A stretch of 64,000 nucleotides of DNA from Selaginella moellendorffii (GCF_000143415.4 NW_003314289.1:1606293-1670292), one strand, 5' to 3'; counted from the first letter of the stretch, positions 3,614 through 63,119 are shown. The notes: generated from the letters alone by a model not told the origin. Numbers and translations: made by a program.

Positions 3614-6600
3614 CTTCCTGTGAAGTTTTTCTTCTTTTCTTCTTGTCGATTGAGCTGACTGACTCTTGGATCTTCGTTTTACTTGCAGGAATTTAGGTCA
3701 ATAGTCGTCTCCACGAGGAGGAGGAGAAATGAAAACCAGTGAGGAGTCGGCTTCAACTTACAGGGCCCCAAGTTGTGATTTTTACCACCATCTGCCACTG
3801 CCAATGTGAAAGGCTGCTGCTGCTCGTGAAAGGGGGTCCTTGGGAATGGATCCAGAATCGCAGGACAGCGTACCATGCATCGAGGAAATCGGTACGCGAA
3901 AGAATGGTGTATAATGTTTTCCTTGATGATGATGAACCTGTGTGCTCCAGGAATCTCGAGAGAGAGGCGAGAGAGAGGGGTAGAAGTGAGAGACGCTCTA
4001 CGAGATGGAGAAAGAGACCGAGAAGCTTTGTTGAGGTATGTCCAGTCCAAGTCGCTGTTTGCCTTCCACAGTGATGCCTGTGATGAAAGAGAAAGGCAGA
4101 TGAAGCACAAGATCTTGTCAGAGACCGACCTGCTGTTGTCCAAGGCGAGATCTTTGCGCGCACTTGCCTCCCCGAGAAGGAGATCCTTCTCCAGAAGCTG
4201 CAGGCCAGATGGAAAGAGAGGGGGGAGGGGGGGAGAGAGCTCTCGGAGAAAAAAGAAACGAGAAAGAGAAAAGAGAAGGCAGACAGGAGGACGAGGAAAG
4301 GAAAAAAAAAAATGGAAAGAAAGAAGGGAATCAAAGCAGCCAGATGGGGGAGGAGTGGGATGGGGTAGTGCAAATGCAGATAAGTGATATGGGCAAAGAC
4401 GAACAGTTCCAAGTTGAAGGAAAGGGGGAGGAAGCGATAAACCTGTAAGTACTATGCCTGTTGTTTGGACAAGTAGATATCTAAACGAGGTTGAACGCTG
4501 CAGGGGCAGGGAGGAGGGAGTAAACGAGAGGGCGAAGCTGGAGAGCACACGGATGATCGTGGCAGTGGCAGTAGCGGAGCATTGATGGTGCCCTCCTCGA
4601 GGAGAATCGCCCCTGCAGAGTAACAAAGAGGTACAGCCATAGCTATATCTCTACCGCCTTAAGTTGGAGCTTTGGATCTCTTCTCTTCGCTCCTCTTCTC
4701 TCAGCTTCTACCATTGCGGCTGTTTGCGATTACTACATAGGTAAACGGGGAGCGATGGAGGGGATAAGATGGAAGACGCTGCTCTACTAGGAACTTGGGA
4801 GGAAAAAAAGCACACAAAAACAAAACAAAGGTAAGTTTTTGCGATATTTTTTTCGTTTTTTTTTTCTTTTCTTTCTTATGTGTGTTGCTTTGTAGGGTCA
4901 AGGCGTGGGGGCCCTCATGCAAATGCATAACGTGCCATAAGGCTCACGCCAGCCAAGGAAGAAAAAGAATTTCTATATGCTCCGGCTTGGCACGGGGATC
5001 GAACCCGGGAGCTACTGGAGCTTGATTAGTGGGAGATTAATTGCTAGGTGGACGTCGTTATCGTGGGACAAAGCACGATTATTTGATTTTTTTTGGCACT
5101 ATAGATGTAGAGTGGGGCGGATTCTTTTAAGATTAAGTTGGGCCCCTTAGAGCATACCACTATGTAGCTTCCCTTTGGGAAATAAGAGATTCTTTTAAGC
5201 ATTGGTACTATCTATGCGGAAATAATTGTTTATAATGGCCTTATATACAAAATTCAAAGGGCATCAATGCAGCAAGTTGCAGTACAATGCCCCACCATAT
5301 GGAACACATCAATCAATCAATCACAACACACCAAGGTACGAGTAGCAAGCTTCAATTTTCATCATCCATTCCATTGGGTTCCATTCCATGTCAAAATTCT
5401 CCAGCACATACAAAAGACACATACACATATTTCTTGTAAAGATTTCGTGGATCTTTTCAAGAAGTCATTTTTATTTTCCTTTTTCACCTATGTAGGTTGT
5501 GACTTTTTCAGAAGAGATCAAGTTCTCAACTCCAATGGGTCCCTGTTTGGATTTTGTAGGGTGCAATACGCATCCTCTAAAATGACGGAGGGTATCTTAC
5601 ATGCATAAGTGGTTGTGGTGAGTGCTGCTTCAAAGAGAAAAAGAATGAAAAAGAAAACATGATTAAATCTAATATATTCTTGTTTAGTTTGCATGTCAAC
5701 ATTCCCTTGCTTGTCCACATGGGCTAAACTATTGATCTGGACAAGAAAATCAAGTGTCAAAACTTTAAAAAACTAGAAATAAAATACAAAAGAGAAAGTT
5801 CTTTAAAAACCTTTTTTGGTTTGCTTAAGCAAACCTATAGATGGTAGTGAATATACCTAGAGTATGCTTGGATATTCTAGGATATTCTACCATCTAACGG
5901 TTGGTATTCATTTAGATTAATCTGGTATTTATAATTTATAAACTTTCCTAAACCCTTTCTAGTATATTCTTTTTTATTCTATCATCTAATAGTTGATATG
6001 CAATAAGATTAATCTTGTGTCTATAAATTACAAACATGCTTATAATTATAAACTTTATTTGATCAATTAGATTAATAAGTAATAATAAAACTACCATTAA
6101 GCAAACCAAGCGTTGCTACATGCAATGTGTAGCAATTTATTTAAACAGTGTGTAATTGTTGTAACTAAAAAAAATATAACTATTTTATAAGTAGCTACTT
6201 ATGTTTAGTTTTTGTAATAAATATGTAATATTCTAATTTTAAACTGAAATTTGCTAAATTTATTAAAATTTAAAATGATTAAATATTAAATAAATAAAGT
6301 ATTGTGAGGTCCAAATGTATGGCTATGATGCCATATACTAATATTAGCATATATTGGGTTTTTGATAGTCATTAAATTGATTTCAATTCGGATCACTCAC
6401 TCTTATCTATAATCTAAGGTTTTTAGGTTAGTTAATATGCACATTTCTATATTATTTTTCTATATTCTATACACTCACATTGGTGGAGGTAAGGAGAAAT
6501 TTTGATATTCTCTGAGGAGTGCTTGGATTTGGAATTTTGGTTTAAATTTAATTTTTAAATTGTTTAGATTTCACTTTCTTTATAGCTTTTTAAATTTTTT

Positions 6601-7045
6601 CTCTTTTGTTTTTTTTCATTTTCATAGGAGAGTAGCATCCTCCACCTCCTTTAACTTTGGAGTAATAATTGGTGCAATTGCTCGATGTTATATAGTTGTA
6701 GTTGAACAATCAAACTTTGTGGCATTCACGGCACGTGGTATAACTCCTTACTTTTACTACCAATCCTCACATCCAATCAAAATTCTTCCATGAGAATCGT
6801 AGGAATTGATTTGATCACTTTACAGTGATTGCTAACTATCATTTTTGGGATGATGTTTAGCGTTTGCATGAATTTCCCACATATCTCTAAGGAATGGTGT
6901 TATAATGGTACAATGGTTTGTACACAATTACTCATGTGGATTAAAGCATTCTCCTATATGTCTTCAAGCACACATTTGGATAATGATAATATCTTCTAAC
7001 AATTGCATTGTCTTCATTAAGGGTTATTTAAGGTAGTGATGTAAT

Positions 7046-7228
7046 TGTAAGTAATTAAAAGAAATGATCTATAAGGGTTTAAATATAGAGGGAAAGGGCC
7101 TATAAATAAGAGTGCATCCCATTTTTCAATCGATTAAGGGTCTTGGGATATTTAGGGTTAAATATCTTTAAGTTTGAATAGTATTGGGATGGGTGACCTC
7201 TCGAGAAGTCTAAATTCTAGAGCTTATA
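7046..7228 (+). mobile_element. Cassandra-like TRIM LTR with 5S-like segment, followed by a PBS remnant
   Basis: TGTAAG…AATAGTATTGGGATGGGTGACCTCTCGAGAAGTC…AGCTTATA, then TTTGGTAT a few bases downstream. Confidence 0.75.
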
Positions 7229-8781
7229 GTAATTTGGTATTCACTTCCAAAACCTTTTGCTTTGTACGGAGCCAAATATGTCAAATGTTATGGCTAGCAC
7301 TTTATTAAAATCTTATGGGATTTATGCATACACTTGCTCTAACCACCCTTAACAATACTCTTCAACTAACAAAACATTATGAGACATTGGCTTTTTCACT
7401 TCTCACTATATGTTTTTCAACTCTACTTCTTATGGGAGATGGTTTTGTTTCAATGGAGGTTGATCTTGCTGCTCATATTCAAGGACAAGGGGGAGGATAT
7501 AGTTATGGTTATGATGTTCGCTACTGGGTGTGTGATGAGATTGGTCATACATATTGGCATTATCAGCATTTTCCGGATTAGTATTTCTTGGGTGGATGTC
7601 GCGAATGTGACTTCGGGTATTGAAAGTTACCTATCAGCTAGTCCTTACGGACACTCTTACCTTATTGCCACGATGGCAGGAGGTCGGTATTGTTGGACCC
7701 ATTATCAGTTTCCCACTTGGGCTAGTTGAGAAACTGGTCAATGACCATGTACTTAAATCGGATAAACATAAGGTAGGAACCTTATGTGTTTCTTGCTGAG
7801 CATACTCGGCCTGGTTTGAGAAACTCCTGTCATTGTCTTGCACTTGCTAGTATCAACAACCCCCGCGATATTGAGATTGGTCCCTCAACATCGCTAGATG
7901 ATAGCTTACCGTGTCTGCCAAACACCCTTGCTATCATGCCCTTTATGTTAGTCTCATTTCGGTCCTAAATGCTATTTATGCAAAGTGTCCAGATTTGTTC
8001 ATTTGGCATATCTACGGAATGTAGAGATCGGCCTGAACACAATGGTGTTCATCCCACATCCAAATTTGCAATCTAAGGACATTCCATATTTAGTAAGTTT
8101 CAAGTTTGTCCAAGAGATTAACTCCTAATACTAAAGGAGGCTTGGGGTGAAAGCCCAAAGCGTGTGTTCCTTAAGGGGGGGGGGGGGGGGGGGGGGCTAT
8201 GGGGGTTCCAAATGTATAGTAGGGATAGTGGGTAGGTCGGGCATGGCTGACTAACCTGAGGCATAGTCTAGCTCCCGCTTGTGTGCCTGTCCTTGTTCTG
8301 CGTCCGGCTTAGGTCTAAGCCCAAGTTCCATTCCATGCTAGCTGGTGGAGTACCCATATCCTCACGCTAGGTCACCAGTATGCCGAAATATCGCCAGATT
8401 CCATTTGGCTCCGTTTTGCGTGTTGGTTCTGGCATTAGGATGCTGGTTACTCCAGGACTGTTCTAAGTCACTCCGGGCCCCTGTCCCTTCGCTCCTTGGG
8501 CTGTATGCTCAGGAGTTGCTCCATGGTCTGGTTCCATCACTCCTTGGCTCCACACTTGGGAGTTTGGCACCATTCCTTCGTTCAGTGGCCCAAGGCTTTA
8601 AACCTCGGGTTCCTATGGACACGTGGCATGACCATGTGGTATGTGACACGTGGCATTTGTCACGTGGCACAAAGAGGGTTTAAGTCCTGCTTCGTGGTGT
8701 TATCCTATAGTAAATCACCATAGGATAAAGGGTCAAAACCACATACGCTACAATGGAGGCTTTAGCATCAACAATGTTCTA

Positions 8782-8968
8782 TTGGTACTACTATGGTGAA
8801 AGGTTGGATACCAAGATTCTTCTGGAAAATAAGGAATCTTACGAGTACTGGAGAGTCCTTGCGCAAATAAAGATGTTGGTACTGCTATGGTGGAAGGTTT
8901 GGATACTGAGATTCTTCCAAGAAATAAGGAGTTTTACAAGTAGTGGAGAGTCCTTATGCAAATAAGAT
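8782..8968. repeat. ~94-bp tandem duplication
   Basis: ttggtact(a/g)ctatggtg…ggagagtcctt(g/a)…caaataa occurs twice in succession. Confidence 0.8.
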
Positions 8969-9066
8969 TATTTCTTTTGAGAGTATCATCAAGGGGTTCA
9001 CTTGACATTAATTCACTTGGCACCAATTCATCCAATAATTACTTTCCAAACTTATTTTTATAACAA

Positions 9067-9661
9067 TGTAAGCTTTTAAATTTAAACTTCCTGAGAGGTC
9101 ATCTAGCCTAATACTATTCAAACCCAAGGATGGTTAACCCCAAATATCCTAAGACCTTTAACCGATTGAAAAATGGAGTGCACTCTTGTTCATAGGCCCT
9201 TTCCTTTTATATTTGAACATTTATAGATCATCTTTCAAGTTGTTTTCTTTGGTTTTTTATAATCCATTATGCTTCCCTACAAGTTCACGCCCTTGTGAAT
9301 AAAAGCTAAAAGCCATAACTCTCCCAAAAACCCCACTCTCTTGACACCTTACCTCTCAAGTCGAGCCCAACTAAAGCACATTAGACCTGCCAAATATCAA
9401 TCAACATATGGTGTAATTCCTTTAATTAACCAATAGAGTTAGACCCAAGACTGTTTTAATACCAAATGTAACCTTTTGAATTTAAACTTCCCGAAATGTC
9501 ACCTAACCCAATACTATTTAAACCCAATAATGCTTAACCCCAAATATCTTAAGACCCTTAACCAATTGAAAAAAAGGGTGCACTTTTGTTCATGGGCCTT
9601 TTCTTTTTATATTTGAACCCCAATGGATCATCTCTCAAGTCATTCTCTTTGGTTGCTTACA
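9067..9661 (-). mobile_element. Complete Cassandra-like TRIM (LTR-internal-LTR)
   Basis: LTRs 9067-9261 and 9467-9661 with TGTAA…TTA(C/T)A ends, PBS-like TTTGGTATTAAAAC on the minus strand, and flanks AACAA/AATAA (5-bp TSD with one transition). Confidence 0.85.
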
Positions 9662-10199
9662 AATAAAAAGACTTCTATTATTCTCTCCGTGTTAGTTTAT
9701 ATAGGCTCAAGTTAATTTTCTATTACTCAGCCTATTACCATATATTGCCATCTATATTCACCTTATGTAATAAAGCCAATTTTCATTCTTTATGGCAATA
9801 GCCATACACATGTATATACATGGGATGAGACAGACTTATTTGTGTGTGTAAGCAATCTTGAGCTTGAGCTTGAGTCATTGTAGGTGGTGTTGAGTTAAGC
9901 TTTTGATATCATTTTTGGTATGGATTGGTTACTATACAATTATTCCAAGTGTGACTTTGAAGTTTTTCCCCCTTGTTTCATATTTTTTTATATTTCTTTT
10001 ATTCTTTTTACTTCTGTTCTTTTTTGTCCTTATTCTTCTACCTTTGCTTCCATCACTCTTATTTTTCAATTACTTCCTCTTATGTTTCCATCTTGCTTTT
10101 TTATTCCCTCTTTATATCCATCCAATAGTCTTTATGTTGTAATAGTTGACTGGCTTATGAAAGAGTATGTTAATCTCTTTGAATTTGACTTGTTGTCTA

Positions 10200-10560
10200 T
10201 TGCCAAGATTGCAACAGATCATCCTATTCCAATTAGGGGTGTTCATCCAATCAAGATTTCTGTTCATCATCAGTTGCTAAAGTAGATCAAAATTTTACTC
10301 GCAAATGTCAAAGAGATGTTGGAGAAGGGTGTTATCTAATAGTTATAGAATCCTTAGGTGTGTAAACCTCATTTTGTTATGAAGCTTGATAGGAGTATTC
10401 AGTTTTATATTGACTATTGGTTGTTAAACGAAGTGACAATTTTTCCTCACATTGTTAATCTCCTAGATCATCTAAGGAGAAGTTATTGATTCACCACGTT
10501 AGATCTTGCTTTGAATACTAGCAAATGTCGATAGCTGATAGTTATTTGCCATCTCTTTGG
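10200..10560 (+). pseudogene. Ty3/Gypsy reverse transcriptase relic
   Basis: Translates with stops and frameshifts to KLDRSIQFYIDYWLLNEVT…PHIVNLLDHL…FTTLDLA, matching the Gypsy RT consensus KKDGSxRxCxDYRxLN…PxIDDLLD…FSxLDL. Confidence 0.75.
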
Positions 10561-10739
10561 TATACATATGTCACAGAGATACATAATTCTATTACTACTT
10601 CACTATATAAAACTCTTATATGGTCATGATTCAATACTGCTAACAAAGTTGAGGTTACTTTCATAATTACCATGAGTTCTACTAAGTCTTAGGATTAGTA
10701 TTTAATGAGCATTCTTCCACTTGTTTGAATAGAGTCCAT

Positions 10740-11323
10740 TGTAGTCAACCAAAGAGAACAACTCAAGAAACGATCCATGGGTTTTAAATATAAAAGGAAA
10801 GGGCCCATGAATAAGAGTGCACTCTCTTTTCCAATTGGTTAAGGGTTTTGGGATACTTGGGGTTAAGTATTATTGGGTTTGAATAGTACTAAGTTGAGTA
10901 ACTTCCTAGAAAGTCTAAACTTATGAGTTTATATTTAATATCAGAGCAATTTCGAGTTCGACTCTATTGGTTGGCTAAGGGAATGTTAAGATTAACATTT
11001 GGTAAGTCTAGTTTGCTCCGGTTGAGTTCAACCCAAGGGTAAGATGTCCCAAGAGCCCCGCTCTCGAGGGAGTTGCGGCTCTTAGCTTCTGTTCACAAGG
11101 ACGTGAATTTGTAGGGAAGCATAGTGGCTTGTAAACAACCAAAGAGAACGACTTGAGAAATGATCCATGAGATTCAAATATAAAGGGAAAGGGCCTATGA
11201 ATAAAAGTGCATCTCCTTTTTTAAATAGTTAAGAGTCTTAGGATATTTGGGGTTAAGTATCCTTGGGTTTGAATAATACTGGGTTGGGTGACCTCCCAAG
11301 AAGTCTAAACTCAAGAGCTTACA
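10740..11323 (+). mobile_element. Complete Cassandra-like TRIM (LTR-internal-LTR)
   Basis: LTRs ~10740-10933 and 11130-11323, PBS-like TTTAATATCAGAGC (tRNA-iMet type TGGTATCAGAGC), purine-rich tract before the 3' LTR, and flanks TCCAT/TCTAT (TSD). Confidence 0.85.
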
Positions 11324-53284: not shown

Positions 53285-53611
53285 ATGGACAACGCCGGTG
53301 GATCAGGCGCTGGTGGAAGTGGGGTCTTGGCTCCGCCACCGCCGATTGAGCCAGTGACTTACATGTGTGGAGGTGAGCGGCGCCATGCTTTTCTTCGCTT
53401 GGTGTGGGTTTTTACATCTTTTTGTTTGCTAGATTGTGGAACCGACAATTCGCTCAAGCCTGGGGATGTGATACAGTGCCGGGAATGCGGCTATCGCATC
53501 CTCTACAAGAAGAGAACTCGAAGAAGTAAGCGAATCTCTTGTTTTTAGAGCTTTCCATTCGCTCATCTCGGCTTTTGGGTGATTGCAGTTGTGCAGTATG
53601 AAGCACGCTAG
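53285..53611 (+). CDS. RPB12: RNA polymerase I/II/III shared subunit 12
   Basis: VTYMCGDCG…[25 protein letters not shown] over 3 exons. Confidence 0.95.
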
Positions 53612-53905
53612 GCGGCAAAGCTCATCCTTTTCGCATGGATCTTAAAGACGATACTGTTCTTTCTCGATCTCCTCGATCTCTCTCACATCCTCTAGGTACT
53701 GTGCTGCGTGTTGTTTTGATAGGAATGGAAGCCCACTAAAGTGGAAGTCCACTTTCGGGAAGAATGCATGAAAGGTGTCACGTATCAATCAACTTCTGGC
53801 GTTTAGGTACTTCAAAATTGCCCAAGATGGGCATCTTTATTTTTTTATAAAGAATGATGGAAGAGTGAATGTGATGGAACGATCTTTCAAAATTTTGGTC
53901 TCGGC

Positions 53906-55468
53906 CTAGAGCTTTGACATCGTGCTAACCTGCTTGTAGTGGCTGGGTCTGCCGTCTGGATACGTCACAAGCACCATCCTGTAGCCTTCACGCTTGAGAA
54001 GCAACTGTTGGCTCAACTCGAGTTGCTCACAGGCCATTTCTCCGGCATGCACACTTGAACCTCGGATGACTTTGGAGTGCAGCAGCATGAACTTGCCATC
54101 CGCCAGCTCCACCACCGCGTTGTGCCATGGCGTTGGGATGTGGAAGTTCTTCTCCTCGGAAGAACGCTGCGCTGCCACTAGAGAGGAATGGATGATGTTG
54201 ATGCCATACTTGGGACCTCTGTTTGGATGCGGGTGGATGGAAATGCGCAGCTGCAAAGGGAAGAGCCACTCCACCATGGCCGAGTATGCACGGTTCCTGA
54301 GGATCATGAGGAAGGCAACCTGGCTGCACAGCTTCTTCTTGGCCGACTTTGACGGGAGATTCTTGCAGCTCTTGTGTTCGTACAAGTCCTCGAGCATGAA
54401 CCTGGAGAAGCCACGATAAAGATTGCGTGTCTCCGGGTCATCCTTGATCTCCTTGGTGACAGTTGACTCGTCACAGCCAAACAAGCACATGAGAGCTCGC
54501 CTGGCATTCTCTGCATTGGCGGTGAGCTCGGTAGCAACAGGATGCTCCACGGTGGTGTTGGAGATAAGCTTCGCAATGCTGTCCTCGCTGTGGTTGTCCA
54601 GCAGAAACTCATCCAGGCGAAAGAAATTGACCAAGCCGGGATACAAGTTGTGTGCCATCTCCCAAAACATCTCCCCATAAGAATCCACAGCAGCATCGTC
54701 CGAGCCGACGAGATCGGAGAAGACATGGCCATCCGAGACGACGTTGTAGTGCACGCCTGGAGCATACACGGCCTTGATGAGATCAGCCACAATCTTCATG
54801 GAATGAATGGCAAGCTCCTCGGCCTTGTCGGGGCTCTTTCCCAGAGTCTTGTCGGGATTGCACGACTTGACTGGAAATGCCGGCAAGATGAACTCGAGTG
54901 GGATATTTCTTGCGACGTGGTACCTCACCCTGTCTGCGAACCTCTGCTTGCCTCCACTGGTGAACCACTGGTCGTGCTTTGGGAAGTGGATGTAATTCTT
55001 CTCAATGATGTCCACAACTTGCGAGGTGATGTCGTCCACCTCTTGAGGTGTGTGCGAGCTGAAGGGCTCCAGAAGACAATCTCTGGTCATGACGCTATTG
55101 TCCAGCAGCAGAGAGGCCAGGTAGCTCATCTCGCTCTCCACTGTGCTCGCGGGATCCTCCATGAAGGCAACGCCCTCGAATCCGTTGCCAATATATCTCT
55201 CGTAGACAGTGGCTGTCCACTCCTGATCATTTGCTGCTCCAAGCATGGAAATCGTGTATCTGTTGATCTCTGGAGCAATAGACCGTGTGGCTTGCTTGGC
55301 CGCCTCTAAATCTTCTGCTGTGCTCGCAACCATGGAGGAAAACATGAAGTCACTACTCTGAGCGGTAGAAACTGGGACATATCTTGACGCAGACTGTGAG
55401 ATGAATGCAACCTCGCCATTCTCCCTGTGAATATACAAGAATGCAATCTTGTCCTTGGGATAAGCCAT
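53906..55468 (-). CDS. Isocyanide (isonitrile) synthase, DIT1/PvcA family; intact copy
   Basis: FILPAFPVKS, PDKAEELA, VVSDGHVFSDLVG, LYRGFSRFMLEDL, AYSAMV, RISIHPH and HIPTPWHN motifs. Intronless, 520 aa. Confidence 0.92.
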   Translation of the reverse strand: MAYPKDKIAFLYIHRENGEVAFISQSASRYVPVSTAQSSDFMFSSMVASTAEDLEAAKQATRSIAPEINRYTISMLGAANDQEWTATVYERYIGNGFEGVAFMEDPASTVESEMSYLASLLLDNSVMTRDCLLEPFSSHTPQEVDDITSQVVDIIEKNYIHFPKHDQWFTSGGKQRFADRVRYHVARNIPLEFILPAFPVKSCNPDKTLGKSPDKAEELAIHSMKIVADLIKAVYAPGVHYNVVSDGHVFSDLVGSDDAAVDSYGEMFWEMAHNLYPGLVNFFRLDEFLLDNHSEDSIAKLISNTTVEHPVATELTANAENARRALMCLFGCDESTVTKEIKDDPETRNLYRGFSRFMLEDLYEHKSCKNLPSKSAKKKLCSQVAFLMILRNRAYSAMVEWLFPLQLRISIHPHPNRGPKYGINIIHSSLVAAQRSSEEKNFHIPTPWHNAVVELADGKFMLLHSKVIRGSSVHAGEMACEQLELSQQLLLKREGYRMVLVTYPDGRPSHYKQVSTMSKL

Positions 55469-56612
55469 GACTCTGAGTTCGTCACTGAGAAATTCAGGTC
55501 GAGCTAAATCGTCAAGTGCCAGCGGTGTTGGTGATCCCCGAGTCTTTTATACGGGAAAACCAAAGGGTCGTCTATCTTTGACTGACGTGATATTTGAAAA
55601 CGTCTTGTCGAGGGAAGATTCCCTTGAAAGTGAACTCAAAGTCGGTTCGTTCAATGCATGTTTTGTGATAAGCACATTGGATCCTGCGTATAAAGAATTG
55701 CAAAATGAATGTTCTTCGAAGCCAAGATTATGCTTCAAGCTAGAACTAGGTCTCTAGCAAGCGATCACTCAACCAAACGAGTAAAAGTTATCAAGCATTA
55801 CCGTGTTGCTTGCACCAATTTTGGGAATTATCCTCTTTCGCTATAAGCACGTGTAAAAGAGCTACAAAACTTTCCATTGTTCTGGGTCACGGTCAACTTA
55901 CTCGGCTGAATGAACGTTCTTCTTGTGAATTATCCATTGCATTGGGATGGCCCACGCAGGACATCCCTGTTGCTTATTCAACACAAATGGTTTTGCGATA
56001 AGCACGTTGGATCCATGTGTTTGTAAAACTTTGCATGGTTCTAATGTTCTTTTAAGCATATGCTTCAGATTCAAACTTGGTCTCAACCAAATGAGTAAAA
56101 GTTGTCAAACGTGAGCATTGACTTCCTAGTGTCCAAGAAGATTTTATTTTTCTACCATTCGTACTGTATTTTCCTTACTGTAGGCCCAAGTAGATCTGAT
56201 ATCTCACCTTGTCTTAAGCCCTCTTGCTTTGCTAATAAATAAACAACTGGCTGTACATTTAAAACTCTTGTATTTGCCCCGGTTGGATTTTTCCAATACC
56301 AAAAATCTCCTCACTAGCACATTGCCCTAATCTTTAGGGTTTCCTAGTGAAACTACAGAAGCTTCCACGGAGAGGTACGTGACTTGTCCTCCATTGAACA
56401 CGTTTTTCAATTGTAGAAACGCTTGTCAAAGATGGTCGACCCGTCCAACTCTCCTTATATATAGCTCAGCTCTAGGCATCAACAAATCAATCATACGACT
56501 ACCAGCTCAGTCAACAGCAGCAAGACAGTAACGTTTCTGCTTGCGATCTCATCTCTAAAGTTTCTTGCCAGAGCTCTGTATTCTAATTTACAAGTCTCCA
56601 CTCCTGATTTCC

Positions 56613-58161
56613 ATGGCTTTTCCAAAGGACAAGATTGCGTTCTTGTACATCCACAAGGAGAATGGCGAGGTGGCATTCATTTCACAGTCTGCCAGAAGAT
56701 ATGTCCCCCAAGTTGCCACTCAGAAGAGCAGTAGTCATGTTTTCTTCCATGGTTGCGAGTACAGCAGAAGATCTAGAGGCAGTCAAGCAAGCCACACGCT
56801 CAGTGGCCCCAGAGGTGAACAGGTACACCATTTCCATGCTTGGAGCTGATTCATGCTCTTCGTGGGAAGCCACTATCTACGAGAGATACATTGGGAATGG
56901 CTTCGAGGGCGTGGTTTTCATCCAGGAGGAGGATAGCGAGAACATGAAGTATCTGGCCTCTCTGCTGCTGGACAACAGCGTCATGACTAGGGATTGTCTT
57001 CTGGAGCCCTTCAGCTCGCACACACCTCAAGAGGTGGACGACATCACCTCGCAAGTTGTGGACATCATTGAGAAGAATTACATCCACTTCCCAAAGCACG
57101 ACCAGTGGTTCACCAGCGGAGGCAAGCAGAGGTTCGCAGACAGGGTGAGATACCATGTCGCAAGAAATATCCCACTCGAGTTCGTCTTGCCGGCATTTCC
57201 AGTCAAGGCGTGCAATCCCGACAAGACTCTGGGAAAGAGCCCCAACAAGGCCGAGGAGCTTGCCATTCATTCCATGAAGATTGTGGCTGATCTCATCAAG
57301 GCCGTGTATGCTCCAGGCGTGCACTACAACGTCGTCTCGGATGGCCATGTCTTCTCCGATCTCGTCGGCTCGGACGATGCTGCTGTGGATTCTTATGGGG
57401 AGATGTTTTGGGAGATGGCACACAACTTGTATCCGGGCTTGGTCAATTTCTTTCGCCTGGATGAGTTTCTGCTGGACAACCACAGCGAGGACAGCATTGC
57501 GAAGCTTATCTCCAACACCACCGTGGAGCATCCTGTTGCTACCGAGCTCACCGCCAATGCAGAGAATACCAGGCGAGCTCTCATGTGCTTGTTTGGCTGT
57601 GACGAGTCAACTGTCACCAAGGAGATCAAGGATGACCTGGAGACACGCAATCTTTATCGTGGCTTCTCCAGGTTCATGCTCGAGGACTTGTACGAACACA
57701 AGAGTTGCAAGAATCTCCCGTCAAAGTCGGCCAAGAAGAAGCTGTGCAGCCAGGTTGCCTTCCTCATGATCCTCAGGAACCGCGCATACTCGGCCATGGT
57801 GGAGTGGCTCTTCCCGTTGCAGCTGCGCATCTCCATACATCCGCATCCAAATCGAGGTCCCAAGTATGGTATCAACATCATCCACTCCTCTCTTGTGGCA
57901 GCCCAGCGTTCTTCCGAGGAGAAGAACTTCCACATCCCAACACCATGGCACAACGCGGTGGTGGAGCTGGCGGATGGCAAGTTCATGCTGCTGCACTCCA
58001 AAGTCATCCGAGGTTCAAGTGTGCATGCCGGAGAAATGGCCTGTGAGCAACTCGAGCTGAGTCAACAGTTGCTTCTCAAGCGTGAAGGGTACAGGATGGT
58101 GCTTGTGACGTATCCAGACGGCAGACCCAGCCACTACAAGCAGGTTATGTCAAAGCTCTAG
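56613..58161 (+). CDS. Isocyanide synthase paralog; +1 frameshift near 56705-56736 (possible pseudogene or N-truncated product from ATG 56737)
   Basis: N-terminus MAFPKDKIAFLYIH is in a different frame from the rest. The C-terminal ~400 aa are nearly identical to the other copy. Confidence 0.85.
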
Positions 58162-58499
58162 GCCAAGACCAAAATTTTGAAAGATCGCTCCATCACATTC
58201 ATTCTTCCATCATTCTTTATATAAAAAATAAAGATGCCCCATCTTGGGCAATTTTGAAGTACCTAAACGCCCGAACTTGATTGATACGTAACACCTTTCA
58301 TGCATTCTTCCATGGTGGAGTGGCTCTTCCCGTTGCAGCTCCGCATCTCTATCCACCAGCATCCGAGTGGATCGGTCGATTTGGATGCGACCAATCCACT
58401 CGATTGGTCGCATCCAATCGAGTGGTCCACTCGATTTAGTCGACGTCAAGGGGTGGCTACGTGCCTCTTGCACACTGCCTGGAAGATGCCTGCAGAGTG

Positions 58500-59335
58500 G
58501 ATGCAAGTCGAAAGGATGTAGACCTACTCTCAGGCACAGGGTACGTATTGGACTTCGAGCTTATGGCAGATACCGACTTTATGAACTTTGTCATCTGGAA
58601 GAGCGCCTCAGAGATGGTAAGCTATGCTGGACAGGCTATAGAACTAACAGAAGAGGAGGAAGCAGACTTGTGCAGCATGGATAAAGTCTTTTGAGGAAAG
58701 TTTCAGCCACTGGCATCTGTTTTGGAAATCATGATCTTAAAGGACGTGAGCCTGCGGGAGGCCGCTGCTTATGTCGCTGTGGGACTTATAACAGAGTTAA
58801 GTCACCCAATGAAGATATTCACGTTCTATGATGGGGTGTCCATGGTGGGTGTCGACGGAAGATATTGAGGAACTCGAGACGGTTGTAGTGCAATACTTCT
58901 GTGCTGGAGAGGGGTGCGTTTTCAGGGGCAACAAGGATACATGTGCTGCATTGTCTGAGGCTGGCCTGGGATGGACAGCTGCGGGGTTTAGTGTTCACCT
59001 GGATGAGTCTGCACCCAGGAGCTACTTTCAATATCAATACCAGGCAAAGGGTTTTTTGCGGAGTTCCTACCTGCAATCAAAGTGGTTGCGGTTGTCAACT
59101 GTTGTGCCTTTCCCGCCAGGCCCGGGTTTGTGCCTGAAGAACTTGGTAGCTCTATCATTCGAGAGCATGTGGTTTAAATACGGGGGAAAGATGGAGACAT
59201 GCCACTTATCAGACCGCTGCTGAAGGCTAATGGATGAAGCAATCTGCACAACGTGGATCTCAGGAGAAAACACTACAGTGCAAGGCATCCGATACGAATT
59301 GAATGAAGGGATGAAGATCCGGAGGTGTATGTGAT
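58500..59335 (+). pseudogene. Disrupted coding-like sequence of unknown family
   Basis: GC-normal, codon-like stretch broken into short ORFs by stops and frameshifts. No family recognised. Confidence 0.35.
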
Positions 59336-60810: not shown

Positions 60811-62354
60811 ACTAACTTTCAGTATTTTTTGAGATGTTAGAGTGGCTCTTAAAGGATCGGTTCTTCATTGGAAGATTGATATATACAGCATTTACAACGT
60901 TTAGATAACAAGTGAAAGGAAACCTTTTATAATTATTATGGATATTTCAAGTATATAATGATATTTTTGTGTTTGATCAATATACATGTTATTTTTTAAT
61001 ATATGTGAAATAACATTTTCTCTGATTTCTTTAATCTCTTCATTGTCATTTATCTTGATGACATTCTCATCTTCTTTGAGACTTAATAAGAACATGATTG
61101 TCATCTTCACTTTATTCTTCAATGCACCACCTTTTTGCAAAGTTGAAAAAAAGAAATTTTAATCAAGATTCTGTGGAGTTTTTAAGTTTAACTGTTTCCT
61201 TACATAGCATCATCATGGATTACTCAGATTTCCATCATTCTTGAGTGGTAATGCTACATTTTGACCTTTAATATTAGACTTTTCATTTTTCTAAATCAGT
61301 TTTTTCTTACAATTCTCTACTCCTCTTGATCACTTACTAATATGTTAACTTTTAAATAGTACTAATTGAAGGTGATAGAAACTTTAGTTCACAGTTAAGT
61401 TTAAACAATCTCCTAATCTTAATACCCATTTTTACATTTCTATACATAGGGTGAGAAATAATACAACCTGTCTAATAGACAATAAAGTAAATATAGAAAA
61501 AACTTCACAAATATTAACAAAAAGACCGTGCCAATACTTTTAACTTCAATAGGCAATCCACTAGGTTGTGCTATTAAATCTTGATAATCCTTAAAATCTA
61601 AAAATATGGTTTATTGCAACTAAATCCAACTATAGAAGTGGATTATTCACAATAAAAACATGATATATCATAAATACTACTCCACCAGATTAACAATATT
61701 ATTTTTGTTATCAATCATGGGTAAAGTGGCTTGGTTCTTAAAATAATAGTTATATTTGAAACTTATCATTTTTATGGTGTTATTGTCATTAAATTATGAA
61801 TTGTCACCTTCTTGTGATTGCTAGGGTGAAAGATATGCTTTGAATATGACTCCAAATAGATCCTCTTTAGTTGTTCAAACTATTATCAAGTTTAATCAAT
61901 TCAGAAAGAATTTGCTCAAATGTCTTAGAAATGGTAAAACTAATTTTGTAACTTTTAAGAATGAACTATATGATGAATATACTTATGAAGTTTTTAGTCA
62001 ATTTTAAATTTATTACCAATAACAAATACTAAGTCAGTTGGCTGATGGTTATACCTTTTATTTTTGGCTGTTTGAGTGTATTGCTTTTAAGCAAACTAGA
62101 CTTGCCAAATGTTAATTTCAATATGAGACACAAATCCCTAAGCCCCAAAGTGGAACTAAAAGGTGCCACGTGGTAGTGACCGAAGTAGAAGCCAAATGAG
62201 TGTAACACATTTGAACTAAAAACTCCAACTTGAATAGTCGAGAGTGGGAATGGAACTCCTAATGAAATGCTCAAGGAATGAGTACGAAGTAAGAAGTAAG
62301 TGAGTTTCTAGAAAAGGGACACAAGAGGACTAACACATGACACATAAAAGTGTC

Positions 62355-62635
62355 AAGATGGAATTTGAAATGGACCTGAGATGGAGTCCAAGATGGACCT
62401 AAAATGGAGTCTAAAATGGACTTGAGATGGGGTCTGAGATGGAGTTTGAGAAGGACCCAAGATGGAGTTCAAGATGGACCTAAGATAGAGTTTGAGATGG
62501 ACCCGAGATGGAATCTGAGAAAGACCCTAGATGGAGTCTAAGATGGACCTGAGATGGAGTTCGAGGTCAAGACTGAAACCGAGACCGAGACCAAGACCAA
62601 AACTGAGACTGAGACCGAGTCCGAGTCTGAGTCCA
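62355..62635. repeat. Minisatellite: ~23-bp unit GAGATGGAGTCCAAGATGGACCT, then 6-bp CCGAGA/CTGAGA units
   Basis: Directly visible tandem array. Confidence 0.85.
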
Positions 62636-62987
62636 AGGGTGGAAGCCCAAAGCGTTCGTCTCCCAGACCCTGGGGGGTTTGGTGAGATCCAAAAGTATAG
62701 TAGGGGGAGGACTCCAGTAGAGCTAGTTGGCTATAAAAGGCTAGTGTGACCAAAAAAAGGTATACTTACGTATTGGGTGATAATATAATTACAAAGTTAG
62801 AGTGAATATAGATAAACAAGTGGGGTAGCTTAAAGAATTGGCTTTAACTCCCCTCAAAGATCAAATGGTTAATGCTTCCAATCTAAGTATGGGTGGCACT
62901 ACCTACTTAGATACCTAATGTGGCTCATCAGAACCTCTCTTTAGCCATATGGCTAAGGCATCTAAAGGCAAAAGGTGACGAGGCTTG

Positions 62988-63119
62988 TGTAAAGCCATGG
63001 TTAAATATAAAAGGAAATGGCTTATGAACAAAAGTTTTTTTTTTTCAATTGGTTAAGGGTGTTAAGATACTTAGGGTTAAGTGTTTACCTCTCAAGAAGT
63101 CCAAATTTAGAAACTTACA
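62988..63119 (+). mobile_element. Internally deleted Cassandra-like solo LTR
   Basis: TGTAAAG…AAATATAAAAGGAAA…CAATTGGTTAAGGGT…AGAAGTCCAAA…CTTACA. Confidence 0.7.

What the first reader, a model, noticed from the sequence alone, without database searches (positions are those of the whole stretch)
53906..58161. Plant-encoded isocyanide synthases (DIT1/PvcA family): candidate horizontally acquired isonitrile pathway
Seen: two intronless genes with the full ICS motif set (LPAFPxKS, PDxAE, SDGxVFSD, RxSIH, TPWH). The first is ~300 bp from a spliced plant RPB12 gene, which argues against simple contamination. Known: ICSs (bacterial IsnA/PvcA, yeast Dit1, Aspergillus XanB/CrmA) convert an amino acid amine to an isocyanide using ribulose-5-phosphate, and the products are often copper-chelating antimicrobials. 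I know of no characterised ICS pathway in land plants. Inference: LYRGFSRFMLEDL, ILRNRAYS…LFP…GPKYGI and HIPTPWHN recall the fungal CrmA-like clade, suggesting fungus-to-plant transfer. Here the enzyme is stand-alone, with no NRPS-like domain and no PvcB/IsnB dioxygenase in the window, so the plant may make a simple amino-acid isocyanide for defence or metal binding.
Basis: partly seen in the sequence, partly recalled or inferred. Interest (0 to 1): 0.93.

Follow-up and report, generated by a model that had tools for sequence, protein, structure and literature searches.

The report
Fungal-type isocyanide synthase genes in Selaginella
The spikemoss Selaginella moellendorffii carries a large, expressed family of Dit1-type isocyanide synthase genes, most likely acquired long ago from a chytrid-like fungus, so it may make isocyanide or N-formyl amino-acid compounds not described from land plants in the papers searched here.

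Summary
**Observation: mostly confirmed.** Window 53906-55468 (-) is an intact 520-aa DIT1_PvcA gene (PF05141, E 6e-83). It lies 294 bp from a spliced RPB12 gene. The head-to-head copy at 56613-58161 (+) has a one-base frameshift near codon 40. It alone has lost two invariant residues (KS to KA, PD to PN), and no gene-2-specific RNA contig was seen, so it is probably decaying.

**Source.** The window is Selaginella moellendorffii scaffold GL377593.1. Gene 1 is already in NCBI; its paralogues are named 'spore wall maturation protein DIT1'. Lim et al. 2018 mention ICS in 'one species of moss'. The presence is therefore on record but unstudied.

**Origin.** The family has about 40 protein models on at least 12 scaffolds. 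dN/dS is 0.12-0.22 and GC3 is host-like. The maximum-likelihood tree places a monophyletic Selaginella clade among chytrid Dit1-like proteins (93/94), apart from Dikarya Dit1 and bacteria. AU tests do not reject the alternatives. Two early-branching paralogues keep a phase-1 intron at the same site as chytrid and Coccidioides genes. This supports fungus-to-plant transfer.

**What fails.** The 'CrmA-like' reading is not supported; the genes are Dit1-type. No P450 or TauD partner lies nearby, and the product is unknown.

First readers flagged the same family elsewhere in this genome.

The parts
53906..55468 (-). ICS gene 1: an intact, intronless, 520-aa Dit1-type isocyanide synthase-like enzyme. 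It has an N-terminal PAS-like domain (about residues 1-110) and a PvcA/IsnA-fold catalytic domain (about 140-470).
   Evidence: ORF. PF05141 at E 6.4e-83. PDB sequence hits to PIsnA 9DH4/9DHM and PvcA 3E59 at E 1e-25 to 1e-28. AlphaFold model with pLDDT 85.5, pTM 0.87. Foldseek TM (target-normalised) 0.82-0.87 to PIsnA/PvcA. Exact-match RNA contigs at 53872-54086, 54389-54657, 55052-55278, 55295-55431 and 55367-55676. dN/dS 0.15-0.22 against paralogues.
56613..58161 (+). ICS gene 2: a head-to-head copy of gene 1 and a probable pseudogene or inactive copy. It has a one-base insertion near 56733 (frameshift after about 40 codons) and unique replacements of an invariant Ser (KS to KA) and an invariant Asp (PD to PN).
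   Evidence: DNA alignment. tblastn in two frames, 56613-56744 and 56737-58158. Motif scan. Almost no RNA contig depth over the gene body (56740-58600) in three RNA runs; the contigs at its 5' end differ at 6-7 of about 120 bases. The RefSeq model P0125 (578 aa) starts in the shifted frame at 56662 and splices past the stop into 58440-58691.
55469..56612 (.). The 1.1-kb divergent intergenic region between the two start codons. It contains the gene 1 5' UTR, which reaches at least 55676.
   Evidence: Exact RNA contigs at 55367-55632 and 55520-55676. RNA depth is zero across 55805-56365.
53285..53611 (+). RPB12 (RNA polymerase subunit, Zn_ribbon_RPAB4). It has three exons, is highly expressed and is convergent with gene 1.
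   Evidence: PF03604 at E 2e-14. Introns 53371-53430 and 53526-53588 are removed in RNA contigs of runs X4, X6 and X9. A poly(A) tail follows 53758. Contig X9 record 23 runs from the RPB12 exons to 54086, inside gene 1. The spliced translation gives 67 aa. The record annotates a 67-aa product here.
58303..58368 (+). Short third ICS fragment (equivalent to residues 395-416 of gene 1) just beyond gene 2.
   Evidence: tblastn 82% identity over 22 aa. Direct repeat D1 and inverted repeat I7.
53758..53920 (.). The 3' flank of gene 1, which belongs to the inverted duplication. Its partner is 58147-58311, so the palindrome spans about 53758-58311.
   Evidence: Inverted repeats I4 and I5, 89-95% complementary.

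Best explanation
The two genes belong to a tandemly amplified, Selaginella-resident family of Dit1-type isocyanide synthase-like enzymes (Pfam DIT1_PvcA).

**Origin (partly shown, partly inferred).**
- The ancestor of the family entered the Selaginella lineage as genomic DNA from a fungus, most likely a chytrid or a chytrid-like lineage.
- The incoming gene kept at least one fungal intron.
- It took on host codon composition and multiplied to about 40 protein models in the diploid assembly. These include several head-to-head pairs on scaffold GL377593.1.
- The subfamily in this window later lost the intron.

**State of the two genes (shown).**
- Gene 1 is intact, represented in RNA libraries and under purifying selection.
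- Gene 2 is a recent inverted copy that is decaying.

**Mechanism (inferred from family knowledge, not shown here).**
- The catalytic domain binds an aromatic L-amino acid, most likely tyrosine, together with ribulose-5-phosphate.
- It converts the alpha-amino group into an isonitrile or its hydrated N-formyl form, as Dit1, PvcA and IsnA do.
- The product then feeds a lycophyte-specific metabolite whose later steps are encoded elsewhere, because no Dit2-type P450 or PvcB-type dioxygenase lies beside the genes.
For: **Identity**
- PF05141 at E 6e-83.
- PDB sequence hits to PIsnA and PvcA.
- Predicted fold has TM (target-normalised) 0.82-0.87 to PIsnA with L-tyrosine or isonitrile product, and to PvcA.
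- Family-invariant residues are kept in gene 1.

**Plant residence**
- The exact protein lies on the 1.97-Mb S. moellendorffii scaffold GL377593.1.
- The window carries ALOG, GRAS, PPR with E motif, THO2, CAP-Gly, B-lectin, kinase and RPB12 genes.
- An RNA contig joins spliced RPB12 to the 3' end of gene 1.
- GC3 is 0.66-0.78, inside the host range of 0.44-0.81.

**Amplification**
- Five ICS genes lie within about 21 kb.
- Further copies lie 90-100 kb away.
- Two 90% clusters hold 27 members, and about a dozen other clusters exist.
- DNA-run depth is 190-540 on the 3' two-thirds of gene 1 against about 10-36 on the flanks.

**Constraint**
- dN/dS is 0.12-0.22 in all 21 pairs, with dS up to 1.1.

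**Fungal, chytrid-like origin**
- All hits above 50% identity are S. moellendorffii. The next best are chytrids at 43-45%.
- An exhaustive HMMER run on 1.84 billion representatives gave the same order.
- In the careful ML tree Selaginella is monophyletic (100/100).
- It sits inside a clade that otherwise holds only chytrids plus one unnamed ENA protein (93/94).
- Dikarya Dit1 (100/100) and bacteria (100/99) are separate.
- Only 2% of bootstrap trees have the chytrids monophyletic without Selaginella.
- The PKD..F.Y and GRPSHY motifs are shared only with chytrids in a 16-sequence alignment.
- Paralogues P0005 and P0006 carry a 57/55-nt GT..AG phase-1 intron after DGHVFSDL. The position and phase match Powellomyces and Phlyctochytrium (phase read directly), and the position matches Cladochytrium and Coccidioides.
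Against: - AU tests do not reject a tree with all fungi as one clade without Selaginella (p 0.147, 16 lnL units worse) or with the chytrids monophyletic (p 0.20). The donor lineage, and strictly the nesting itself, rest on moderate support plus rare shared characters.
- The Selaginella stem branch is long (0.99), which makes its placement less certain.
- No other plant was shown to lack the gene by a genome search. The absence rests on protein collections that may not hold other Selaginella proteomes.
- Logan contigs have no strand, and an RNA library can carry DNA, so transcription of gene 1 from its own strand is likely but not proven.
- No enzymatic evidence exists. The Dit1 clade's own chemistry (isocyanide or formamide) is disputed (PMC7345447).
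- No pathway partner was identified.
Confidence: 0.78

Rival explanations
1. Vertical inheritance: the gene is an old eukaryotic gene kept in fungi and in the Selaginella lineage and lost from all other plants. The shared intron would then be an ancestral eukaryotic intron.
For: The AU test does not reject Selaginella lying outside a monophyletic fungal clade (p 0.147). The shared intron is old within fungi, being present in both chytrids and an ascomycete. Paralogue dS up to about 1 shows long residence.
Against: No other plant protein appears in the 120 best hits listed from a collection of about 15 billion proteins, nor among the named proteins of the best 150 cluster representatives. This would require many independent losses across Archaeplastida. 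The best tree nests Selaginella among chytrids (93/94 and 87/87). The derived PKD..F.Y and GRPSHY motifs are shared with chytrids only, not with Dikarya.
Confidence: 0.08
2. One reading: transfer from a Dikarya fungus of the CrmA-like (ICS-NRPS) clade, with loss of the NRPS part.
For: These motifs are indeed present.
Against: The same motifs occur throughout the Dit1-type proteins in the alignment, including yeast Dit1p and the chytrid proteins. None of the 120 nearest proteins has NRPS-type domains, although that search could not see proteins above about 910 aa. Full-length homology, including the N-terminal domain, is with single-domain Dit1-type proteins (98-99% query coverage with Powellomyces and Geranomyces). 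The tree puts the genes with chytrids. Dit-type ICS are reported as deeply diverged from other fungal ICS (bioRxiv 10.1101/2023.04.17.537281). No CrmA sequence itself was included in a tree here.
Confidence: 0.04
3. Contamination or misassembly: the ICS genes come from a fungus living on the sequenced plant.
For: Fungal affinity of the proteins. Chytrids are common in plant and soil samples.
Against: The genes lie inside a 1.97-Mb scaffold between plant-specific genes. An RNA contig from an independent study joins spliced RPB12 to gene 1. Runs from several studies and years hold the sequence. GC3 is host-like. Paralogues lie on at least 12 scaffolds next to plant genes. Identity to any fungus is only 45% or less.
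Confidence: 0.01
4. Dead cargo: the whole family is a decaying relic with no function in the plant.
For: Gene 2 is frameshifted and has lost two invariant residues. Many database models are fragments of 126-394 aa. RNA depth on gene 1 is low, at 2-30 for exact-match contigs.
Against: dN/dS is 0.12-0.22 in all pairs, even at dS about 1. At least seven full-length open genes keep every family-invariant motif. Exact-match RNA contigs cover gene 1 in three runs, while neighbouring intergenic DNA has zero depth. The 386-394-aa models start with the same internal sequence (MTRDCLLE) and probably reflect old gene calls rather than truncation.
Confidence: 0.06
5. Direct bacterial origin, as for many plant horizontally acquired genes.
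For: Bacterial ICS are the best-known family members and give the PDB matches.
Against: Bacterial homologues are only 28-31% identical over the catalytic domain. They lack the N-terminal domain in PvcA and PIsnA (315-330 aa chains aligned only to query residues 179-468). They are separated from the eukaryotic clade at 100/99. The shared spliceosomal intron site with fungi is also incompatible with a bacterial source.
Confidence: 0.01

Closest known systems
Chytrid Dit1-like proteins (Powellomyces hirtus, Geranomyces variabilis, Phlyctochytrium arcticum, Blyttiomyces helicus, Cladochytrium tenue, Irineochytrium annulatum)
   Same: They are homologous over the full length, with 34-45% identity and up to 99% coverage. 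They share the N-terminal PKD..F.Y start and the C-terminal GRPSHY motif. The phase-1 intron after DGHVFSDL is at the same site as in the early-branching Selaginella paralogues. They fall in the same clade in the ML tree.
   Different: The chytrid genes mapped have three to six introns; the Selaginella genes have one or none. Chytrid genes sit beside an OPT transporter (Powellomyces, Phlyctochytrium), or beside a P450 and fused to an MFS (Cladochytrium, Irineochytrium). The Selaginella genes have no such neighbours and are massively amplified. None of the chytrid proteins has been characterised, to my knowledge.
Saccharomyces Dit1 (spore wall maturation protein; the dit1/dit2 cluster)
   Same: Same Pfam family, same two-part architecture (N-terminal extension plus ICS domain) and same invariant residues. 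Identity is 43% over the catalytic part (S. kudriavzevii Dit1p). RefSeq names the Selaginella paralogues after it.
   Different: Yeast Dit1 belongs to the separate Dikarya clade (100/100). It works with the adjacent P450 Dit2 to make bisformyl dityrosine for the ascospore wall (PMC7345447; bioRxiv 10.1101/2023.04.17.537281). No P450 lies in the 64-kb window or in the flanks (about 10 kb each side) of the four other Selaginella loci whose neighbours were listed. Yeast DIT1 is, to my knowledge, single-copy; here there are dozens. The C-terminus differs (GGHF-type rather than GRPSHY).
Bacterial isonitrile synthases PvcA (PDB 3E59) and PIsnA (PDB 9DH4, 9DHM)
   Same: The catalytic fold matches (TM 0.82-0.87 normalised to the target, Foldseek E about 1e-21) and so do the core motifs (LPAFPxKS, SDGHVF, RxSIHP, TPWH). 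PIsnA was crystallised with L-tyrosine and with an isonitrile product, which supports an aromatic amino-acid substrate for the fold.
   Different: Identity is only 24-31%. The bacterial proteins have 315-330 residues and lack the 140-170-residue N-terminal PAS-like region. Bacterial genes usually pair with a TauD-type dioxygenase (PvcB/IsnB; for example the Hymenobacter locus), which is absent here.
Aspergillus fumigatus CrmA / XanB (ICS-NRPS and ICS-dioxygenase hybrids)
   Same: The same Pfam ICS domain.
   Different: The Selaginella proteins carry no NRPS-like or dioxygenase domain and group with Dit1-type proteins. Dit-type ICS are reported as deeply diverged from these clades.

Membership tests
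DIT1_PvcA / isocyanide synthase superfamily (PF05141) | Significant match to the family profile above the curated threshold | tested here: met
   Gene 1 scores 278.8 bits and gene 2 scores 269.2 bits, against a cutoff of 26.4.
DIT1_PvcA / isocyanide synthase superfamily (PF05141) | Family-invariant residues in the LPAFPxKS, PDxxE, SDGHVFSD, RxSIH and TPWH motifs | tested here: met
   Gene 1 keeps all of them. Gene 2 does not: it has Ser to Ala in LPAFPVKA and Asp to Asn in SPNKAEE, both unique among the Selaginella models in which the motif could be read.
DIT1_PvcA / isocyanide synthase superfamily (PF05141) | PvcA/IsnA three-dimensional fold | tested here: met
   AlphaFold model with pLDDT 85.5. 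Foldseek matches to 9DH4, 9DHM and 3E59 at E 7e-22 to 3e-20, target-normalised TM 0.82-0.87.
DIT1_PvcA / isocyanide synthase superfamily (PF05141) | Catalysis: amino-acid amine plus ribulose-5-phosphate gives an isonitrile (or formamide) | not testable with these tools
   This needs recombinant enzyme assays.
Fungal Dit1-type subfamily | Placement inside the eukaryotic Dit1 clade rather than with bacterial ICS | tested here: met
   The eukaryotic clade is separated from bacteria at 100/99. Selaginella lies with chytrids at 93/94. AU tests leave the exact position within or beside fungi open.
Fungal Dit1-type subfamily | N-terminal extension of about 140-170 residues ahead of the ICS domain, homologous across members | tested here: met
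   Query coverage is 98-99% with Powellomyces and Geranomyces and 84-90% with Coccidioides and Daldinia. The region aligns. The model shows a PAS-like sheet-and-helix domain at residues 4-103.
Fungal Dit1-type subfamily | Conserved fungal intron positions | tested here: inconclusive
   One of the three positions shared by chytrids and Coccidioides is kept in paralogues P0005 and P0006, with the same site; the phase was read directly in two chytrids and matches. The two genes of this window are intronless.
dit1/dit2 gene cluster (Dit1 plus P450 Dit2, with or without MFS Dtr1) | Adjacent Dit2-type cytochrome P450 | tested here: not met
   No P450 was found among the long ORFs of the window or among the called genes about 10 kb either side of four other Selaginella ICS loci whose neighbours were listed. 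It is present beside Coccidioides and Cladochytrium Dit1. A P450 elsewhere in the genome was not searched for.
CrmA-type ICS-NRPS hybrids | NRPS-like adenylation, thiolation or transferase domains fused to the ICS domain | tested here: not met
   PF05141 is the only Pfam hit on both proteins. The 520-aa length leaves no room for such domains.
PvcA/PvcB or IsnA/IsnB-type bacterial pathway | Partner TauD/TfdA Fe(II)/2-oxoglutarate dioxygenase, adjacent or fused | tested here: not met
   None in the window. Plant-type 2OG-FeII_Oxy genes lie 4-10 kb from paralogue P0005 only. They belong to a different family, and any link is untested.

The most novel reading that the evidence does not exclude
Selaginella uses a chytrid-derived, amplified Dit1-type enzyme family to make isocyanide or N-formyl aromatic amino-acid metabolites. 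None was found for Selaginella in the papers searched here, and I know of none from any land plant. Possible roles are metal-binding or antimicrobial defence compounds, or cross-linked formyl-tyrosine material in spore or cell walls, in parallel with the fungal spore-wall dityrosine layer.
Probability: 0.4. Interest if true: 0.8.

Novelty: new member of a known kind. Interest (0 to 1): 0.58.

Why it matters
- I know of no isocyanide or N-formyl-tyrosine chemistry reported from land plants. An expressed, selectively maintained family of ICS genes in a model lycophyte gives a direct route to test for it.
- It is also an unusually well-marked case of fungus-to-plant gene transfer. The tree, two lineage-specific sequence motifs and a retained fungal intron position all point the same way, and the gene then amplified about twenty-fold.
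- The likely donor group is notable. Chytrids include parasites of plant spores and pollen, but donor ecology was not tested here.
- The case is tempered by the genes having sat in public annotation since 2010 and having been mentioned in one sentence by Lim et al. 2018. What is new is the analysis, not the existence of the genes.

Tried and rejected
**Searches that returned nothing useful**
- The search for related loci on bacterial and archaeal genomes with the fungal/plant alignment found nothing, because the derived patterns were too eukaryote-specific. Bacterial outgroups were taken from a tblastn of plasmids instead.
- Literature searches for Selaginella with 'isocyanide synthase' or with 'pyoverdine' gave no paper. 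A broader six-term search listed none among its top 25 that combined Selaginella with isonitrile, isocyanide or dityrosine.
- Richards et al. 2009 (Plant Cell) on plant-fungus HGT could not be read. I cannot say whether it lists this gene.
- No paper on the PIsnA structures was found, so substrate-contact residues could not be checked.

**Analyses that did not hold up**
- The Embleya open frame was a poor slice. It gave a branch of length 10 in the quick tree and was dropped.
- The AU tests were expected to reject fungal monophyly and did not. The donor claim is weakened accordingly.
- I considered whether a BAHD acyltransferase next to two paralogues marks a duplicated cluster. tblastx shows only the ICS gene itself is shared between those loci, so the adjacency may be chance.
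- I considered that the gene 2 frameshift might be an assembly error. The model P0004 on the other large scaffold starts with the same shifted-frame peptide, which argues against this without settling it.
- The Logan contigs gave no strand and no tissue information, so the expression pattern could not be read.

Full report
**1. What is at the coordinates**

Window 53906-55468 (-) is an uninterrupted 520-codon ORF. Its product matches Pfam DIT1_PvcA (PF05141) at E 6.4e-83 over residues 181-469. It carries LPAFPVKS, SPDKAEE, SDGHVFSD, RISIH and TPWH.

The two genes are head to head. Their 3' 1204 nt are 97% identical and their 5' 350 nt are 82-88% identical. The inverted duplication extends about 150 nt past each stop codon, so it spans about 53758-58311. 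A 66-nt third fragment lies at 58303-58368.

Gene 2 is damaged.
- The start codon homologous to that of gene 1 is at 56613.
- One extra base near 56733 shifts the frame after about 40 codons.
- The ORF in the finding begins in the shifted frame.
- The RefSeq model avoids the problem with an internal start. It then splices past the normal stop into unrelated sequence.
- Gene 2 alone has Ala for the Ser of LPAFPxKS and Asn for the Asp of PDxxE. Both residues are invariant in a 50-sequence alignment. The comparison covers the Selaginella models in which the motif could be read.

**2. Source of the window and whether the genes are resident**

The exact gene 1 protein is held in NCBI on a 1,968,525-bp contig. 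This is Selaginella moellendorffii scaffold GL377593.1, at about 1,660,198-1,661,760. Its paralogues there are named 'spore wall maturation protein DIT1 [Selaginella moellendorffii]'.

The window holds typical land-plant genes: ALOG, GRAS, two PPR genes (one with an E motif), THO2, CTU2-like, CAP-Gly/LRR, B-lectin, a protein kinase and RPB12.

RPB12 is a three-exon gene for a 67-aa protein. Its stop codon ends 294 bp before the end of gene 1. Both its GT..AG introns are removed in RNA contigs of three runs from three studies. One contig (X9 record 23) continues from the spliced RPB12 exons to 54086, which is 180 nt inside gene 1.

GC3 of the ICS genes (0.66-0.78) lies within the range of neighbouring host genes (0.44-0.81). 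Contamination is excluded for practical purposes.

**3. Expression and constraint**

In three RNA runs, contigs with no mismatch lie on gene 1 and its 5' UTR. They cover 53872-54086, 54389-54657, 55052-55278, 55295-55431 and 55367-55676. The intergenic 55805-56365 has zero depth, and the body of gene 2 has almost none.

Logan contigs have no strand, and DNA carry-over cannot be fully excluded. Transcription of gene 1 is therefore likely rather than proven.

Pairwise dN/dS among seven full-length family members is 0.12-0.22. dS runs from 0.17 (gene 1 against gene 2) to about 1.1 for the oldest pairs. The family is old and under purifying selection.

**4. Size of the family**

- Five ICS genes lie within about 21 kb around the window's end, in the order -, +, -, + and -.
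- Identical copies lie at 1,750,273 and 1,764,233 of the same scaffold, inside a 13,960-bp tandem repeat.
- Further members lie on at least eleven other scaffolds.
- Two 90% clusters alone hold 27 protein entries.
- The assembly carries both haplotypes, and old and new gene models overlap. A fair estimate is 10-20 loci per haploid genome.
- A 2024 DNA run shows summed contig depth of 190-540 on the 3' two-thirds of gene 1 (patchier, about 60-490, on gene 2), against about 10-36 on the flanks. 269 contigs were laid at 95% identity or more. This agrees with many near-identical copies.
- First readers flagged the same family on another piece of this genome and 125 kb beyond this window.

**5. Origin**

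*Similarity searches.* In a word-indexed search of 5.8 billion clusters, every hit above 50% identity is S. moellendorffii. The next hits are chytrid fungi (Blyttiomyces, Cladochytrium, Zopfochytrium, Phlyctochytrium, Powellomyces, Geranomyces) at 34-45% identity. After them come ascomycete Dit1-type proteins, with yeast Dit1p among them.

An exhaustive HMMER pass over 1.84 billion 50% representatives gave the same order. No plant other than S. moellendorffii appeared among the named proteins of the best 150.

*Alignment.* Selaginella and chytrid proteins share features that the five Dikarya proteins in the 16-sequence alignment lack. One is an N-terminus beginning (Y/F/L)PKD..F.Y. The other is a C-terminal GRPSHY motif.

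*Tree.* A careful ML tree used 53 sequences, the LG+C20+F+G4 PMSF model and 496 columns.
- Selaginella is monophyletic (100/100).
- It sits inside a clade that otherwise holds only chytrids, one protein later named as Irineochytrium, and one unnamed ENA protein (93/94).
- It is sister to the group of Spizellomycetales-type chytrids plus Blyttiomyces (87/87).
- Dikarya Dit1 forms its own clade (100/100).
- Bacterial ICS are separated at 100/99.
- Only 2% of bootstrap trees make the chytrids monophyletic without Selaginella.

*AU tests.* The tests do not reject all fungi as one clade without Selaginella (p 0.147). They also do not reject the chytrids as one clade (p 0.20). The tree favours nesting but does not prove it.

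*Intron.* An independent character helps.
- The two earliest-branching full-length Selaginella paralogues, P0005 and P0006, each carry one short GT..AG intron of 57 and 55 nt.
- The P0005 intron contains a stop codon and the P0006 intron shifts the frame, so both must be spliced.
- The intron sits in phase 1 in the codon after DGHVFSDL.
- The same site holds an intron in the chytrids Powellomyces, Phlyctochytrium and Cladochytrium and in the ascomycete Coccidioides Dit1. Phase 1 was read directly in Powellomyces and Phlyctochytrium.
- Fungal genes share two further intron sites that the Selaginella genes lack.

Three conclusions follow. The gene came from a eukaryote with fungal gene structure, not from a bacterium. 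It came as genomic DNA, not as cDNA. The direction was fungus to plant. The subfamily in this window lost the last intron afterwards.

**6. What the protein is likely to do**

The AlphaFold model (pLDDT 85.5, pTM 0.87) has two parts.
- Residues from about 140 to 470 match PIsnA crystallised with L-tyrosine and with an isonitrile product, and also PvcA. Target-normalised TM is 0.82-0.87 and E is about 1e-21.
- Residues 4-103 form a five-stranded sheet with flanking helices. This part draws PAS-domain matches over about 100 columns.

The architecture and invariant residues are those of Dit1-type enzymes. From family knowledge, the expected reaction is conversion of the alpha-amine of an aromatic amino acid, probably tyrosine, to an isonitrile or N-formyl group, using ribulose-5-phosphate as the carbon donor.

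Which of the two products is released is disputed even for yeast Dit1. That enzyme is reported to give N-formyl-tyrosine, and PvcA cannot replace it (PMC7345447). Others treat it as an ICS with an isocyanide intermediate (bioRxiv 10.1101/2023.04.17.537281).

No Dit2-type P450, MFS or TauD dioxygenase lies in the window or within about 10 kb of the four other Selaginella loci whose neighbours were listed. In contrast, Coccidioides and Cladochytrium have an adjacent P450, and two chytrids have an adjacent OPT transporter. Downstream steps in the plant are unknown.

**7.

The presence of PF05141 in a plant is not new. RefSeq annotates the family. Lim et al. [quoted passage not shown]

I found no paper that analyses the Selaginella genes. 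The library lacks most subscription journals, and Richards et al. 2009 could not be read.

**8. Verdict**

This is a real, resident, amplified and constrained family of Dit1-type ICS-like genes in S. moellendorffii. It is best explained by an old transfer from a chytrid-like fungus. It is a new host lineage for a known enzyme kind, and its chemistry is untested.

Interest is moderate to high for plant specialised metabolism and for eukaryote-to-eukaryote gene transfer.

Noticed in passing
window 53589-54086: RPB12 transcripts read through into the antisense of gene 1. One RNA contig (X6 record 18) splices a GT..AG 3'-UTR intron (53804-53936) and continues to 54086. Another (X9 record 23) runs unspliced to 54086. 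X4 shows a poly(A) tail after 53758. The convergent genes therefore overlap at the RNA level.
   Followed up: partly
P0121 residues about 4-103 (window 55160-55459, - strand): The N-terminal extension shared by Dit1-type enzymes is predicted to fold as a PAS-like domain. Foldseek reports local matches to ARNT, HIF-2a, PpsR and phytochrome PAS domains at probability about 1.0 over roughly 100 columns. An IMG relative is even named 'PAS domain S-box-containing protein'. Its role in Dit1-type enzymes seems undescribed.
   Followed up: partly
L012 4617-7468 and L013 1691-4518: In the chytrids Powellomyces hirtus and Phlyctochytrium arcticum, an OPT oligopeptide transporter gene lies next to the Dit1-like gene. 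In Cladochytrium tenue (L015) a P450 lies upstream and the Dit1 model is fused to an MFS transporter. Irineochytrium has a similar fusion named 'Dityrosine transporter 1'. These may be chytrid dit-type clusters.
   Followed up: no
L003 6346-8027, L010 5858-7239, L009 15331-20999: BAHD acyltransferase genes (PF02458) lie 2-4 kb from the ICS paralogues P0002 and P0006. Two plant-type 2OG-Fe(II) oxygenase genes lie 4-10 kb from P0005. tblastx shows that only the ICS genes themselves are shared between these loci, so the adjacency may be chance or an incipient cluster.
   Followed up: partly
window 53926-55129 vs 56944-58147, and 55155-55469 vs 56612-56927: The palindrome is unevenly similar. It is 97% identical over the 3' 1204 nt but only 82-88% identical over the 5' 350 nt. 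This pattern suggests partial gene conversion between the arms.
   Followed up: no
L001 and L002 (GL377593.1 1,740,273-1,775,798): Two identical 521-aa ICS genes sit in a 13,960-bp tandem repeat unit. The unit is otherwise filled with repeats, and those repeats also match window 6300-11300 and 62100-63000 at 70-83% identity.
   Followed up: no
window 54057-55050: RNA contigs of 926-994 nt in two runs lie on gene 1 with 39 differences (about 96% identity), and they are identical to each other in the listed differences. They probably come from a more highly expressed paralogue, at depth 42-85 against 2-30 for exact gene 1 contigs. Which paralogue this is was not determined.
   Followed up: no
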